From the NCBI RefSeq assembly GCF_006345805.1, contig NC_043008.1, positions 43,958,001 to 44,022,000 of the forward strand: DNA of 64,000 bases, written 5' to 3'. Below, in pieces: positions 2,056 to 57,755 of this stretch. Both the position numbers and the translations under genes were made by a program. Positions within the stretch are counted from its first letter, which is position 1; each line of letters starts with the position of its first letter. The DNA comes from Octopus sinensis. Taxonomy: Eukaryota. The notes under the pieces were generated by a model. That model was given only the letters and a program-made list of their open reading frames with translations, did no database searches and was not told the origin of the DNA.

Positions 2056-2149
2056 ATGTATATATGTGTATATGTATATACAGGTACACGTACCTTTTAT
2101 CTTTATTGTTTCAGTATATGCATATATATATACGTACCTTTTATACGTC

Positions 2150-2276
2150 GGTCTGCAAAATTTCAACCCCTCCTCCACGGGGTGCAGACTGGGCAACGCG
2201 AGCACAGCAAGCCAGCTGTGCACACGGGGCTATGACAGTCATCAAGTCCTCAACGGTGGAACAGGCGGATGAAGTT
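2150..2276 (+). ncRNA. HDV-like (double-pseudoknot) self-cleaving ribozyme fold at RTE 5' end
   Basis: P1 GGTCTGC 2150-56 / GCAGACT 2184-90 (G.U at site); P2 AATTTCA 2159-65 / TGAAGTT 2270-76; P3 ACCCC 2166-70 / GGGGT 2179-83; L3 TCCTCCAC; P1.1 CC/GG then GCAAC; P4 hairpin GCACAGC/GCTGTGC 2202-21; J4/2 GGCGGA 2264-69. Confidence 0.7.
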
Positions 2277-2786
2277 GCCTTAACAACTCAACGGCTGTGA
2301 AGGCGGACGAAGGCTGCAGCAGACCATCGACTCCAATCGTCTCGGTTTACCTTGCCATTGGGTCAAGTTGGTGGTCTGTCAAGTTTACGTGTGCTTTACT
2401 GGGCGTGCGATCACAAGCACACGTTAAAACATTTCACGCACAGGCGTCTTCGCCACCACTCTTCTTATTCTTTCCAAGTCTTTCGCCGATCGGCGATGGA
2501 TGACGGGAGCAGGCTCGTGAAGGCTGGAGGCTCCTAGTGCAGAACCGGCACGGATGCAGTGGTTACATGATTCAGTCGCTCTATCTTTCGGAAGAAGCAG
2601 GGAAGATGTTTGGCAGCAGTATCCACGACTGAGCAGCCCTGTTTAGGATCCACTCTGCTCACCCTGAATTGGGAAGGGGCTAGAAAAGGTGACCTAAACA
2701 TAGTCTGCTTCACCCCAATCCTCTCTGGAAAACCGCGTCCAGAGGGATCACCATCATGCGATCGAAAGTCAAGATCAAGATACGCA

Positions 2787-5175
2787 ACGCTGAAATTCGG
2801 GACCTGGAATGTCAGGACTCTCATAGATAACACCAACTCAGACGGACCCGAAAGGCGAACTGCAATCATCGCCCGGGAACTCCATCGATTCAATTTTGAC
2901 ATCGTAGCTCTCACTGAAACCCGGAGAGCCGGAGAAGGCCGGCTGAGAGAAGAAGGCGGTCAATACACCTTTTTCTGGAAAGGAAGGTTACAATCCCGAC
3001 CATCAACGGATCCATGGTGTGGTTTTTGCAATACGAAACACCATTCTATCCAAACTGACAGGGCAGCCCATCGGAATGTCCGCACGATCATGACCCTCCG
3101 AATCCAGCTTGTCAAAAGTCAGCACGCAACTATCATCAGCGGAGGATTTAGTCAGGGAAGAGTTTTACAGCCAGCTTGATAGCATTCTCTCTACCGTCCC
3201 AAAGGACGAGAAGATCATTCTCCTGGGATATTTCAACGCCAGAGTTGGGAGAGATCGTGAACTCTGGACAGGAACCATCGGAAAGGAAGGAGTGGGAAAA
3301 GTCAATGCCAATGGAACTCTGCTACTCACTAAATGTGCTGAACATAACCTGCTGATAACCAACACCCTTTTTCGCCAGAATAATCGATATAAGGTCTCAT
3401 GGCAGCATCCAAGATAAAAAAAATGACATCTCATCGACTATATCATCGTGAGATCCCGAGACCAGCAAGATGTGTTGCTCACCAGAGCCGCCACTGGAGC
3501 AGATGAGTGTTGGACAGATCATCGCCTCATCGCCTCCACCATGAAAATCAAACTCCGACCAAAAGTGAAAGACGGAGCGACCATCCTGAAAAGCAACACT
3601 GAAATAGGAGACAGATGGAGAGAACACTTCGATGACCTCCTCAGTCACAAGGCTACCATCGACAAAAGCATACTTGACATGGTTCCTAAAGAGGCCAAAG
3701 ATTATTCTCTCGCTCGAATCCTGAACAACCGCCTCAAAACGCTGTCAGAGAGGATCCTTCCTGAGACGCAGACCGGCTTTAGGCCATCACGAAGCACAAC
3801 CGACATGATCTTCACGCTGCGACAGCTACAAGAAAAATGTCGTGAGCAACACCAACCGCTCTATTTGGCCTTTATCGACCTATCCAAAGCCTTTGATCGT
3901 GTCTCGCGAGGGCTCCTCTGGGATATTCTCGCCCAGTATGGATGCCCAGATAAGTTCATCCGGATCTTCAAACTCCTCCACGACAATATGCACGCCAGAG
4001 TCCAGACCGACAGAGGCAGTCCTGAGCCCTTTAAAGTCACCTCCGGAGTGAAGCGAGACTGCGTGATAGTGCCAACTCTCTTTACCATCTTTATCGCGAC
4101 AGTGTTGCACATCATACGAGATGACCTTCCACCTAGCATCGAGATCTCGTACAGAATGGACGGCAAGCTTTTCAACCTCGCTCGCCTCAAAGGTACGTCA
4201 AAGACAAAGGCGCAAAGCTTGCTAGAGTTCCAATATGCCGACGACAACAGTGTAGCAGCTTACAGAGAGGATCACCTCCAACAGATCCTAAATGCTTTTC
4301 ATCATGCACCTACTAAACTTGGACTGAGCATCAACATCAAGAAGACTCACTTACTCTACCAACCTCCTCCCAATGCACGTGTTGACAACCCGCCATCGAA
4401 TCAACTCGAAGGAATTCCACTGGAAAATGTGAACCATTTCTGCTACCTTGGGAGCCATCTGTCAGCAAAGGTAGACCTCAGCGATGAAATCCAACACCGT
4501 CTGAAGTGTGCAGGAACAGCTTTCGGCAAGCTTCGAACAAGAGGTTTTGCTGATCGGGACATCCGAACCGAAACCAAACTCATGGTGTACAGGGCAGTCA
4601 TTATTCCAACCCTCCTTTACGCATCCGAAACCCGGACCCCGTATAGTCACCACCTGAAAACGCTCGAGAAATTTCACCAACGCTGTCTTCGGAAGACCCT
4701 TAACATCAGCTGGGAAGACAGAAGAACAAACGTCAGCGTGCTACGAGAAGCAAAAATGACCAGCATCGAAGCCTATGTCATCAAAGGCCAACTAAGATGG
4801 AGCGGCCACGTGGTTAGAATGACTGACGAACGACTTCCCAAACAGATCTTCTACTCCCAACTCAAAGACGGCAAGCGCACAAAAGGAAGCCAGAAGAAAC
4901 GCTACAATGACTCCCTGAAAACGAACCTCAAAAAGTGTGACATCGACTGGGAGGAAACGGCAAAAAACAGACCACTCTGGAAAACCACCATCCATGAGGG
5001 AACGGCGACTTTCGAGTCGAAAAGGTCTGTAGAGCTGGAGGAGAAAAGACGACGACGGAAAGAGCGCCAACAACAACCACGTGTGACTCTCCCTTCCGGC
5101 ACTAGATGGCCGCACTGCGACCGATCTTTTCAAGCAAGAATTGGTCTTATCGGTCACCTACGGACTCACCAGTAA
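2787..5175 (+). pseudogene. Disrupted EN-RT ORF of the RTE element
   Basis: Split over ORFs 2610-3179, 3109-3417 and 3448-5175 by frameshifts and stops. Internal deletions are apparent, and the first Cys of the C-terminal CxxC is mutated (RWPHC). Confidence 0.9.
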
Positions 5176-5371
5176 ATTTGCGCGAAGACTATCATCCTCG
5201 ACCTTGAGGGATTGCCATGATGATTGTTTCAGTCATTGCTCTAAAATTGTTTTAAGCCTGAAACTTATTTCGTCAGACCCTTTTTGCCGAACGGCGAAGT
5301 TAGAGGCATGTAAAAACAGTAGAAAAAGCAGCAGCACAGTATATAATTAATTGCTTTCGTCTATTTTGAGA

Positions 5372-15474: not shown

Positions 15475-16219
15475 GCATGTATAAGTATGTATATATATAT
15501 ATATATGGCCGCAGTCAAAATGACTGAAACAAGTAAAAGAATAAAAGAGTATATGGATATATATACTAGCAGGTTCCACACAGTTACCGGCTGCTAGATC
15601 TGCCCACGAACATTGGTCAGTCTGGGGCTATAGCATTATAATAGAAGACACTTATACAAGGTGAGACTTAAAGGTACTAAGACCCTTACCATGTGACTGC
15701 AAAGCGGAATTCCTAACAATAGCCATGCCTTTGCTGAGGAAATTTTTATAAACTGTCTATCCGATTGTTTCAGTAACTAGGACACAAACTTAATTTAAGA
15801 ATTACGTTTGTCTTCTAGTGCTGACAGTACAACCTGTCATTGATTTATTTCGAGAAGTGAACACTTTTATGAGGAGAGAAAATGGAATTTCATAGAACAA
15901 AATAAGAGAAGAGGGGAGAGGAACAACATCAACGACCAAAAGATCCTGGGCGTTTCAGAATGAAGTTATAAATATTTCCTTAATCGAGATTCTTCCTGAT
16001 AGCAAACTAGAACATGTATTTAGATATTTGTTGAATTATTTTATTTACAGTTTGATATCATTTAGGAAATTCCCATAATTTTTCTCGGCGTTCCAGTTGT
16101 CTTACGATAAATAGAGTAGATTGACATCGAGGTGATGTGTTCCTTATGACGTCTTAACACATCAGAGACATTGCGACATCAGAGACATATAGAAAGTGCG
16201 CGCGTGTGTGAGTGTGTAT

Positions 16220-56568: not shown

Positions 56569-57755
56569 CGCACACACGCACGTGAGTACATGTTTACGTG
56601 TGTATTACTATTTGTGTTTTGTCCTCCATCACCGCATGACAAACGGTGTGTATTTCTAAGCCCTCAATACTAAGCAGCTCGGCGGATAAGATCTTTAGAA
56701 AAAGTACCAGACTTGAAAAATACGCTTTGGGGTGGATGTGTTCGACTAAATCCCCGAAGACGCCATCACATGACCATAATTTAAAGACTGAAACAATTGA
56801 AGGGTAAAAAGAAAGACGCGTATATCCAAACATTTTGTTACATTGCACGATATACTGCAAGTAAACTAGAACCACTTAGACAAGTGGCTGTCAACCCAAT
56901 ATTATATTTACCTCTGGGACCTTTCGATTACTAATTTATTCTGCCGTATCCCAATAGACATTCGATGTTGAATAACTAGTTCTATAAATATGTCTCTCAT
57001 AATTTCTGCTTGCTTTTCATACGGTCCACGGTCAAAAGTTTGCGATTGAAATGTCTAAGAAAACGTTTCAGTTTTCGGAAACACGTTACACTGTGATGCA
57101 AAACAGAAACCGATGTGATTCTTGCAATAAATAAAGAGCACACCGTCGGTTGCGATGATGAGGGTCCCAGCTGATGCTATCAATGGAACAGCTTGCTTGT
57201 GAAATTAACTTGCATGTGGATGAGCACTCTACAGACACGTATAACCTTAACGTAGTTCTGAGGGATATTCAGCGTGACACAGAGTGTGACAAGTCTAGTC
57301 CCTTGAAATACAGGTCCTACTCATTTTTGCCAGGTGAGTGGACTGGAGCAACGTGAAACAAAGTGTCTTACTGAAGGACCCAACGCGTCGCCGGGAATTG
57401 AACTCACGACCTTACATCCGTGAGCCGAATGCCCTAACCACTAAGCCACGCGGTTTCACACTTGAAAATAAATACGTTTTAGGGAAATGAACAACGGTGC
57501 CTATACTTTTCTTAAAGTCTAATTTTCTATTGTATTCTTTCGCCGATACTCTTCGTTACAGGGTCGTAAACAAACGGACTCCTGTTTTCAAGCGGTGAGA
57601 GGGACGACAAAGACAGACACAAAACCGTGAACACACACATATACACACATATATATATATTCTTACATACACACTCAGGCGCTCATGCACACGCATACGC
57701 TTACAGACACAAACAAACACACACTCACACACACAAACATACACGCACATATACA

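What the first reader, a model, noticed from the sequence alone, without database searches (positions are those of the whole stretch)
2150..2276. HDV-like double-pseudoknot ribozyme beginning at the inferred 5' boundary of the RTE LINE
SEEN: every HDV element appears in the correct order. These are a G1.U wobble-closed 7-bp P1 (GGTCTGC/GCAGACT), a 7-bp P2 (AATTTCA/TGAAGTT, one wobble), P3 around an 8-nt L3 starting TCC, a GG-GCAAC junction as in genomic HDV, a 7-bp hairpin in P4, and a J4/2 of C-G-G-A (CNRA) holding the putative catalytic C2266. Sequence immediately upstream is low-complexity flank. KNOWN: HDV-like ribozymes define 5' ends and aid translation initiation of RTE and R2 elements (e.g. 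the Anopheles drz-Agam motifs), and RTE LINEs are reported as expressed in octopus brain. Deviations: P3 can pair 5 bp (canonical 3) and the base of P4 is poorly paired, so this may be a structural variant or a decayed copy.
Basis: partly seen in the sequence, partly recalled or inferred. Interest (0 to 1): 0.85.

Follow-up and report, generated by a model that had tools for sequence, protein, structure and literature searches.

The report
Damaged HDV-like ribozyme at RTE start

Summary
A match this strong is expected 0.02-0.04 times per window by chance. G2150 is the true 5' end of the element: a mantis-shrimp copy (L006) starts at the same G, a metagenome copy (L001) two bases in, and a diverged copy (L008) starts with its own covarying P1.

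Relatives show a different, more compact fold. It keeps P1 and the GGGCAAC junction. P3 is 3 bp around the loop UCCACGN. P2 is TCAACCCC (2163-2170) paired with GGGGCTATGA (2226-2235). J4/2 is GGC-NAA-C, so the catalytic C corresponds to C2221, not C2266. This fold is 92.7% paired across four copies with six compensated changes.

The window copy lacks seven bases that form the 3' strand of basal P4, and its J4/2 reads CACA. The element itself has a frameshifted endonuclease and two internal deletions. It is therefore most likely an inactive relic of a known ribozyme-retrotransposon association.

In passing I found a covarying four-helix RNA element at 2608-2722, present in 60 related loci and absent from Rfam.

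The parts
2105..2115 (+). 5' copy of the target-site duplication ATTGTTTCAGT
   Evidence: The same 11-mer lies at 5223-5233, directly after the element's 3' (ATG)2 tail. It is the longest word shared by the two flanks.
2116..2149 (+). 34 nt of extra (filler) DNA between the target-site duplication and the first base of the element. It is TA-rich and contains a 13-nt copy (ACGTACCTTTTAT) of flank 2088-2100.
   Evidence: It does not align with the flanks of L006 or L001. Added nucleotides at 5' junctions are described for ribozyme-processed R2 elements (PMC3774820).
2150..2156 (+). P1 5' strand GGTCTGC. The predicted cleavage site is 5' of G2150, which is also the first base of the element.
   Evidence: 7/7 pairs with 2184-2190, with a G.U wobble. 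L006 homology starts at this G. L008 has GGTGTC/GACACT with two compensated pairs.
2157..2162 (+). J1/2, single-stranded in the compact fold.
   Evidence: Positions 2160-2161 vary (AT, TG, AG) with no compensating change in the invariant AAGTT downstream.
2163..2170 (+). P2 5' strand of the compact fold, TCAA-CCCC
   Evidence: Pairs with 2226-2235 in all four copies, 8/8. T2163-A2235 becomes C-G in L008. This helix was not part of the covariance model used to make the alignment.
2171..2183 (+). P3 (U2171.U2183 mismatch, C2172-G2182, C2173-G2181) enclosing L3 UCCACGG (2174-2180). C2175 and C2176 pair with G2192 and G2191 as P1.1.
   Evidence: This is the Rfam HDV-F-prausnitzii alignment of L006, with L3 UCCACGU against consensus UCUaCGU. 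L008 has ACU/AGU 3/3 and L3 UCCGCGU.
2184..2192 (+). P1 3' strand GCAGACT (2184-2190) followed by the GG of P1.1 (2191-2192)
2193..2221 (+). J1/4 GCAA, the orphaned basal P4 5' strand CGCGA (2197-2201), and the P4 hairpin CACAGC-AAGCCA-GCTGTG (2203-2220). The deletion lies at the 3' end of this hairpin, after T2219 or G2220 depending on the alignment.
   Evidence: L001 and L006 carry 7 extra nt here, which pair with CGCAA/CGTGG as basal P4. The window scores 94 bits against 117-118 for L001 and L006 with model R1.
2221..2225 (+). J4/2 remnant C-A-C-A-C. C2221 is the homologue of the catalytic C.
   Evidence: Relatives read GGC-AAA-C (L001, L006) and GGC-CAA-C (L008), aligned to the Rfam consensus GGCuAA.
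2226..2235 (+). P2 3' strand GGGG-C-T-A-TGA. This is the 3' end of the compact ribozyme.
   Evidence: The Rfam alignment places CGGGGCUCU of L006 on the consensus uGgGaCaca.
2266..2276 (+). Probably not part of the family ribozyme.
   Evidence: Perfect only in the window. Given the real 5' half, the chance of a CNRA followed by a P2 of at least 7 bp is 0.55%. This stretch is part of the conserved 5' UTR block that starts near 2224-2244.
2608..2722 (+). Conserved four-helix RNA element of the RTE 5' UTR. Noticed in passing, same element.
   Evidence: Alignment A4 of 41 loci. 90.9% of cells paired and 14 of 20 pairs with compensated changes. Model R2 finds 60 loci. No Rfam match.
2790..5175 (+). 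Degenerate APE + RT reading frame. APE runs from about 2790 to 3417 with a frameshift. RT is 3448-5175 and ends in a C2H2-like motif.
   Evidence: Pfam Exo_endo_phos and RVT_1. The ORFs lie in different frames. Two deletions of about 490 and 270 nt relative to L006 are also seen against P0001.
5176..5222 (+). 3' UTR ending in ...CCTCGACCTTGAGGGATTGCC plus (ATG)2
   Evidence: Relatives end at the same place, followed by (ATC)n or (ACG)n repeats.
5223..5233 (+). 3' copy of the target-site duplication ATTGTTTCAGT

Best explanation
Window 2150-2235 is a damaged copy of an HDV-like self-cleaving ribozyme that forms the first ~90-95 nt of a family of RTE-type LINEs. In intact relatives the RNA would fold as follows. 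P1 is 6-7 bp and begins with a G.U wobble. P2 is YCAA-CCCC paired with GGGG-C-U-N-UGR. P3 is 3 bp around a 7-nt loop UCCRCGN. Two loop C's pair with the GG after P1 to form P1.1. P4 has a conserved base and a variable tip. J4/2 is GGC-NAA-C, whose C is the general acid.

Inferred from established knowledge of R2, L1Tc, Baggins and RTE ribozymes: the element is transcribed as part of a longer host transcript. The ribozyme cuts 5' of G1, so every RNA template, and hence every full-length new copy, begins at that G.

The window copy keeps P1, P2, P3, P1.1 and the P4 tip. It has lost the 7 nt that form the 3' strand of basal P4, and it has A to C at the purine position of J4/2. It sits in an element with a frameshifted endonuclease and two internal deletions. 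It is therefore most likely an inactive relic.

Shown: the pairings, the element boundary, the covariation, the deletion. Inferred: catalysis, co-transcription, loss of activity.
For: 1. Boundary. Three independent insertions start at G1 or two bases in, each after unrelated flank: window, L006 and L001. The diverged copy L008 starts at its own P1, directly after (TA)n.

2. Rfam. The HDV_ribozyme model aligns full length, positions 1-89. L006 scores 33.0 bits (E 0.002 in a 221-nt search) and the window 25.7 bits (E 0.08). HDV-F-prausnitzii and drz-agam-1 also match weakly.

3. Model R1. This model was built from the window lineage alone. It finds L008:9234-9405 at 28.1 bits, E 5e-4 over 392 kb, full length, and no other plus-strand site.

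4. Pair counts. On the four-copy alignment with pseudoknots, 92.7% of cells are paired. Six pairs have compensated changes (P1 x2, P2 x1, P3 x1, basal P4 x2), against 0-1 in slid controls. P2 is 100% paired although it was not in the model.

5. Conserved J4/2 and P2 3' strand. The motif GGC-N-A-A-C-GGGG-CU is shared by L001, L006 and L008, and L003 has a near-match, GGC-TA-GGGG.

6. Damage. The 7-nt gap and the CACA J4/2 are specific to the window, and its scores are lower (against 57).

7. Element type. APE + RT, a 3' trinucleotide-repeat tail and an 11-bp target-site duplication.

8. Literature. HDV-like ribozymes at RTE 5' ends are described (PMC6765202; PMC3774820).
Against: 1. No copy reaches Rfam's gathering score of 50.

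2. Neither L006 nor L001 passes a strict descriptor. P3 has a U.U or C.A mismatch, and the contiguous P2 core is only 4 bp.

3. All six compensated changes come from one diverged sequence (L008), and the alignment was fitted to the nested helices.

4. Other subfamilies (L002, L007, L010-L013) share the 5' UTR only from about 2241 onward and show no HDV-like match. 80 metagenome relatives show no enrichment of descriptor matches.

6. No cleavage data exist for any copy.
Confidence: 0.7

Rival explanations
1. The reader's fold is the working one in this copy or its sublineage. It would be an HDV-like ribozyme spanning 2150-2276, with a 7-bp P2 (2159-2165 with 2270-2276), a 5-bp P3, a branched ~70-nt P4 and catalytic C2266. 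It might have taken over after the canonical J4/2 region was deleted.
For: All helices are perfect in the window. Three differences from L001/L006 each improve this fold: AT at 2160-2161, one C fewer in the C run, and G2180. A CNRA followed by a P2 of at least 7 bp arises by chance in only 0.55% of simulations given the real 5' half. L003 keeps ATTTCA/TGAGGT directly after GGCGGA.
Against: P2 is 4/7, 5/7 and 3-4/7 in L006, L001 and L008. The changes are uncompensated: G2271 to A in L006, T2270 to G in L008, and 2160-2161 TG in L001/L006. P4 has no closing stem next to P1.1, so C2266 is not held in place. A 5-bp P3 is not canonical, and the Rfam models align the 3-bp register. The fold was derived from this one sequence, which biases it towards fitting. 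The host element is a dead copy, so there has been no selection since insertion.
Confidence: 0.1
2. The conserved 5' terminal structure (P1 enclosing a C-rich loop) is not a ribozyme. It would be a 5' end element with another role, such as an internal promoter or start-site determinant, RNA stability, or recognition by the element's own protein. The resemblance to HDV would then be coincidental.
For: All Rfam scores are below gathering. P3 is imperfect in most copies. P1 covariation alone proves only a hairpin. A defined 5' end could equally come from a precise transcription start.
Against: Sequence identity to the HDV consensus falls in exactly the single-stranded core: the L3 UCC, CUGGGCAAC, and GGCNAA followed by a G-rich P2 strand. 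The long-range P2 is 8/8 in four copies with one compensated pair. Basal P4 covaries. The ribozyme-RTE association is known.
Confidence: 0.15
3. Chance resemblance with no conserved structure.
For: Loose descriptor matches occur about once per window by chance.
Against: The match strength is expected only 0.02-0.04 times per window. It sits on an independently mapped element boundary. It is conserved and covaries in relatives.
Confidence: 0.03

Closest known systems
[quoted passage not shown] 2011, as cited in PMC6765202 and PMC3774820)
   Same: Same position (first nucleotides of an RTE-type LINE), same predicted cleavage site (the element's 5' junction), same double-pseudoknot order and same proposed role (releasing the element RNA from a co-transcript).
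   Different: This is a different RTE lineage, whose copies occur in a mantis shrimp genome and in marine metagenomes. Sequence is not alignable beyond the core. drz-agam-1 matches at only 14.8-18.5 bits. P3 carries a mismatch in most copies and P2 has two single-base bulges. The primary paper was not available to me, so the comparison rests on reviews.
Hepatitis delta virus ribozyme family, Rfam RF00094
   Same: The model aligns full length. The core letters are shared: L3 UCCUC/UCC, CUGGGCAAC after P1, GGCNAA in J4/2, a G-rich P2 3' strand, and the G1.U wobble.
   Different: Scores of 25.7-33.0 bits are below the gathering score of 50. J1/2 is longer. It is a cellular retrotransposon, not a viral RNA.
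HDV-like ribozyme of Faecalibacterium prausnitzii, Rfam RF02682
   Same: The L3 loop is nearly identical (UCCACGU against consensus UCUaCGU) and the P3 register is the same.
   Different: 18-21 bits against a gathering score of 44. That one is bacterial and sits upstream of glmM.
R2 retrotransposon 5' ribozymes
   Same: An HDV-like fold at the 5' end of a non-LTR element. 5' junctions carry added nucleotides because cleavage removes the upstream sequence (PMC3774820). This matches the 34-nt filler at 2116-2149.
   Different: R2 inserts site-specifically into 28S rDNA and is transcribed by Pol I. This family inserts in or next to TA-rich repeats and other sites.

Membership tests
HDV-like self-cleaving ribozyme | Nested double pseudoknot in the order P1-P2-P3-L3-P3'-P1'-P1.1-P4-J4/2-P2' | tested here: met
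   Met for L006, L001 and L008, and for the window except basal P4. 92.7% of cells paired across 31 pairs, including pseudoknots P2 and P1.1.
HDV-like self-cleaving ribozyme | Cleavage site at the first nucleotide of P1 (usually a G.U pair), coinciding with the RNA 5' end | tested here: met
   G.U is present in the window, L006 and L008. Element homology starts at that G. This is a test in sequence only. The 5'-OH end itself was not observed.
HDV-like self-cleaving ribozyme | 3-bp P3 closing a 7-8 nt L3 whose C's form P1.1 with the two bases after P1 | tested here: inconclusive
   L3 is 7 nt (UCCACGN) in all copies. P1.1 is 2/2 in the window and L001, and 1/2 in L006 and in L008 on the model alignment. 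P3 is 3/3 only in L008 and L003, and 2/3 (U.U or C.A) in the window, L006 and L001.
HDV-like self-cleaving ribozyme | Catalytic C in J4/2 within C-N-R-A, directly 3' of P4 | tested here: not met
The window reads C2221-A-C-A with the basal P4 3' strand deleted. Relatives meet the feature: CAAA in L001 and L006, CCAA in L008.
HDV-like self-cleaving ribozyme | Score at or above Rfam's gathering threshold for an HDV-type family | tested here: not met
   No gathering match in the window or in loci L001-L009. The best scores are 33.0 bits (L006) and 25.7 bits (window) against 50.
HDV-like self-cleaving ribozyme | Mg2+-dependent self-cleavage giving a 2',3'-cyclic phosphate and a 5'-OH | not testable with these tools
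   Needs in vitro transcription and cleavage assays.
RTE-clade LINE | Single ORF with an N-terminal APE-type endonuclease followed by a reverse transcriptase | tested here: met
   Pfam Exo_endo_phos and RVT_1 in that order. Intact relatives are 960-1000 aa.
RTE-clade LINE | 3' end with short tandem repeats instead of poly(A), and variable target-site duplications | tested here: met
   (ATG)2, (ATC)n or (ACG)n after a shared terminus. An 11-bp target-site duplication.
RTE-clade LINE | Phylogenetic placement of the RT within the RTE clade | not tested
   Only indirect evidence. Relatives are named 'craniofacial development protein 2-like' and 'endonuclease-reverse transcriptase' by their sources. 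No tree was built.

The most novel reading that the evidence does not exclude
After the canonical basal P4 strand was deleted and J4/2 was altered, this sublineage rewired the ribozyme. A downstream C2266-GGA and a new 7-bp P2 (2159-2165 with 2270-2276) would then serve an HDV-like core with a 5-bp P3 and a branched 70-nt P4. That would be a natural example of a self-cleaving ribozyme rescued by a surrogate catalytic strand.
Probability: 0.08. Interest if true: 0.55.

Novelty: new member of a known kind. Interest (0 to 1): 0.33.

Why it matters
HDV-like ribozymes that define the 5' ends of RTE, R2, L1Tc and Baggins elements are established, so this is a further lineage and not a new principle.

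It is useful for three reasons. It gives a structure-based marker for the true 5' end of this RTE family when annotating genomes rich in repeats. It shows how reading a fold from a single copy can misplace the catalytic strand when that copy carries a small deletion. It also draws attention to the rest of the 5' UTR: a strongly covarying four-helix element about 75-180 nt upstream of the ORF, found in 60 related loci and absent from Rfam.

That element is a candidate for how an uncapped, ribozyme-cut RTE RNA is translated or recognised by its own protein. How such RNAs are translated is an open question for these elements.

Tried and rejected
1. Rfam at gathering thresholds on the window and on nine loci gave nothing. 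Only sub-threshold HDV-type matches appeared in short-range scans. An E-value scan of six further loci found no HDV-type match.

2. There is no second copy of the element in the window.

3. Exact-pattern scans for the conserved 5' UTR anchor found no match in viral contigs or in JGI metagenomes.

4. 80 metagenome RTE relatives share only the 2608-2722 block. A relaxed HDV descriptor gave about 60 matches on both strands with no enrichment upstream of the ORFs. It was too permissive to be informative.

6. L002, L007, L010, L011, L012 and L013 have unrelated or truncated sequence 5' of about 2241. I could not find their 5' ends.

7. L009 and L093 are 5'-truncated copies.

8. I first took the motif GGC-N-A-(N)-GGGG seen about 300 nt upstream of many ORFs for a J4/2. 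It is a different conserved motif, homologous to window ~2489-2500 (GGCGATGG).

9. I first took the CTG at the initiator position as decay. It is shared with L001 and L008, so I do not count it as damage.

10. The primary papers (Ruminski 2011, Webb 2009) are not in the library.

11. Pfam on other long ORFs of the window gave no host gene, so the organism stays unidentified.

Full report
THE OBSERVATION

- P1 is GGTCTGC with GCAGACT, 7 bp, starting with a G2150.U2190 wobble.
- P2 is AATTTCA with TGAAGTT, 7 bp with one wobble.
- P3 is ACCCC with GGGGT around TCCTCCAC.
- GGGCAAC follows P1.
- A 7-bp hairpin lies at 2202-2221.
- C2266-G-G-A precedes the 3' strand of P2.

P4 has no closing stem. 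Region 2193-2265 folds as two adjacent hairpins.

My descriptor scan of both strands found this as the only full match outside TA microsatellites, apart from one weak match on the minus strand. In 12 Mb of Markov sequence a match this strong occurs 0.02-0.04 times per 128 kb.

THE HOST ELEMENT

Downstream lie an APE-type endonuclease (from about 2790, frameshifted) and a reverse transcriptase ORF at 3448-5175. Relatives number in the hundreds, and intact ones are 960-1000 aa.

The element ends at about 5222 with ...GAGGGATTGCC plus (ATG)2. Relatives end at the same point, followed by (ATC)n or (ACG)n. That is the RTE-type 3' end.

An 11-bp direct repeat, ATTGTTTCAGT, lies at 2105-2115 and 5223-5233 and brackets the insertion. 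So 34 nt (2116-2149) lie between the target-site duplication and the first base of the element. This filler is TA-rich and includes a 13-nt copy of nearby flank. Such additions are described for ribozyme-processed R2 elements (PMC3774820).

Compared with L006 and P0001, the window copy has two internal deletions of about 490 and 270 nt, plus the APE frameshift. It is a dead copy.

THE 5' BOUNDARY

There is no second copy in the window, so I fetched relatives through their proteins.
- L001 is an ENA metagenome contig, 91% identical. Its homology starts at T2152, after (TA)n.
- L006 comes from Oratosquilla oratoria chromosome CM102914.1 and is 88% identical over the whole element. Its homology starts exactly at G2150, after unrelated (TA)n.
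- L008 is a 73-79% identical subfamily from the same genome. It starts with its own P1 directly after (TA)n and is flanked by (TA)n on both sides.

WHICH FOLD

The Rfam HDV_ribozyme model aligns full length to the window at 25.7 bits. It aligns better to L006, at 33.0 bits and E 0.002. In L006 the model gives a compact fold:
- P1.
- A 3-bp P3 (UCC/GGU) around L3 UCCACGU. The F. prausnitzii model has UCUaCGU at this loop.
- G(G/A)GCAAC.
- A P4 made of a base (CGUGG/UAGCG in L006, CGCAA/UAGCG in L001) and the CACAGC/GCUGUG hairpin.
- J4/2 GGC-AAA.
- C-GGGG-CUCU on the consensus P2 3' strand.

The partner of GGGG is the C run just 5' of P3. The helix continues as TCAA with U-N-UGA, with two single-base bulges.

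I built a covariance model (R1) from the window lineage using only the nested helices. It finds L008:9234-9405 at 28.1 bits, E 5e-4 over 392 kb, full length, with a 100-nt insertion in the P4 tip. It finds no other plus-strand site in 94 sources.

On the resulting four-copy alignment, with P2 and P1.1 added as pseudoknots, 92.7% of cells pair. Six pairs carry compensated changes: P1 x2, P2 x1, P3 x1 and basal P4 x2. Slid controls give 0-1. P2 is 8/8 in all four copies although the model did not contain it.

The caveats are that all compensated changes come from L008, and that the alignment was fitted to the nested helices.

It is 4/7 in L006, 5/7 in L001, 3-4/7 in L008 and 6/7 in L003. The changes are one-sided and none is compensated.

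THE WINDOW COPY

Relative to L001 and L006, and to the CGGC-CAA-C of L008, the window lacks 7 nt (ATAGCGG or GATAGCG, depending on the alignment) at the 3' end of the P4 hairpin, after T2219 or G2220. These bases are the 3' strand of basal P4. The window reads G-C2221-A-C-A-C-GGGG where relatives read GGC-AAA-C-GGGG. This explains three things:
- the orphaned CGCGA at 2197-2201;
- the lower scores of the window copy, 25.7 against 33.0 with Rfam and 94 against 117-118 with R1.

In the compact fold the catalytic C corresponds to C2221, and it can be locked into the hairpin by G2202. I infer that this copy is inactive or badly impaired. No tool here can test that.

WHAT REMAINS OPEN

Given the real 5' half, a CNRA followed by a complement of at least 7 bp abutting P3 arises in only 0.55% of simulated downstream sequences. 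L003 also keeps 6 of 7 pairs.

No copy reaches Rfam's gathering score. P3 carries a mismatch in three of five copies. Other subfamilies (L002, L007, L010-L013) share the 5' UTR only from about 2241 onward, and I could not find an HDV-like fold in them. A non-ribozyme 5' hairpin is therefore kept as a rival at 0.15.

COMPARISON WITH WHAT IS KNOWN

[quoted passage not shown] The paper on octopus RTE elements does not mention a ribozyme (PMC9115989). However, nothing here shows that the window is from an octopus. The closest copy whose organism I could name is from a mantis shrimp. This is a new member of a known kind, and this copy is a relic.

SIDE FINDING

Window 2608-2722, about 75-180 nt upstream of the ORF, is the one part of the 5' UTR that aligns across distant relatives.
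- An alignment of 41 loci shows four helices with heavy covariation. 90.9% of cells pair, 14 of 20 pairs have compensated changes, and there are 83 compensated cells against 5-8 in slid controls.
- A model built from it finds 60 matches in 94 sources, one per locus. All but two (inverted fragments in L004 and L093) lie on the plus strand, in the 5' UTR upstream of the endonuclease region.
- Rfam has nothing like it.

It is the more novel object in this element and deserves its own study.

Noticed in passing
window 2608-2722: A conserved four-helix RNA element in the RTE 5' UTR. Helix a is CUGAGCAG/CUGCUCA, with an inner hairpin CCU/AGG. Helix c is CCCC/GGGG, which becomes CCUC/GAGG or CUCC/GGAG in relatives. 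Helix d is GGGGC/GCCCU, which becomes GGACC/GGUCU or GGGGU/ACCCC, and it closes a near-invariant loop UAGAAAAGGU. 14 of 20 pairs are compensated across 41 loci, and model R2 finds 60 matches. There is no Rfam match. It could be an IRES-like or protein-binding element of the uncapped, ribozyme-cut RNA.
   Followed up: yes
window 2105-2149 and 5223-5233: An 11-bp target-site duplication, ATTGTTTCAGT, brackets the insertion. 34 nt of TA-rich filler lie between the duplication and G2150, including a 13-nt copy (ACGTACCTTTTAT) of flank 2088-2100. The same 11-mer also occurs at 15764 and at 56787 (minus strand) with unrelated flanks.
   Followed up: partly
L006 (Oratosquilla oratoria CM102914.1:76575840-76582015) against window 2150-5093: The whole element is about 88% identical to a copy in a mantis shrimp genome. 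Further subfamilies (L008, L009, L093) occur in the same genome. Protein relatives at 50-70% identity occur in fishes, Anolis, coelacanth, amphioxus, corals and shrimps. Either the window is from a crustacean and not an octopus, or the family has moved horizontally.
   Followed up: no
window 2251-2279 and 2289-2318: An imperfect tandem duplication: TCAACGG-TGGAACAGGCGGATGAAGTTGC and TCAACGGCTGTGAAGGCGGACGAAGGCTGC. Both units are conserved in L001, L002, L003, L006 and L008. The function is unknown.
   Followed up: no
window 2319-2325: GCAGACC is a perfect complement of the P1 5' strand GGTCTGC, so it could form an alternative pairing. It is kept in L001 and L006. L008 has no matching change (GCAATGAATC), so there is no covariation support.
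   Followed up: partly
window 2790-2792: The codon homologous to the initiator ATG of L002 and L003 is CTG in the window, L001 and L008. Because it is shared across subfamilies, it suggests non-AUG initiation and not private decay.
   Followed up: partly
window 2148-2149 with 2191-2192: In this insertion the flank can extend P1 upstream by two pairs (C2149-G2191 and T2148.G2192). That would compete with P1.1.
   Followed up: no
window ~2489-2500; L014:744, L016:217, L017:606, L019:859, L020:887, L022:1051: A second conserved 5' UTR motif, GGCGATGG(G/A), lies about 300 nt upstream of the ORF in many relatives. It contains an ATG in a good context, so it may be the start of an upstream ORF.
   Followed up: no
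L008 9130-9233 and 13209-13290; L006 1760-1826; L001 1-42; L002 3985-4032: Family members sit in or next to (TA)n microsatellites. L008 is flanked by (TA)n on both sides. This suggests that the endonuclease prefers TA repeats.
   Followed up: partly
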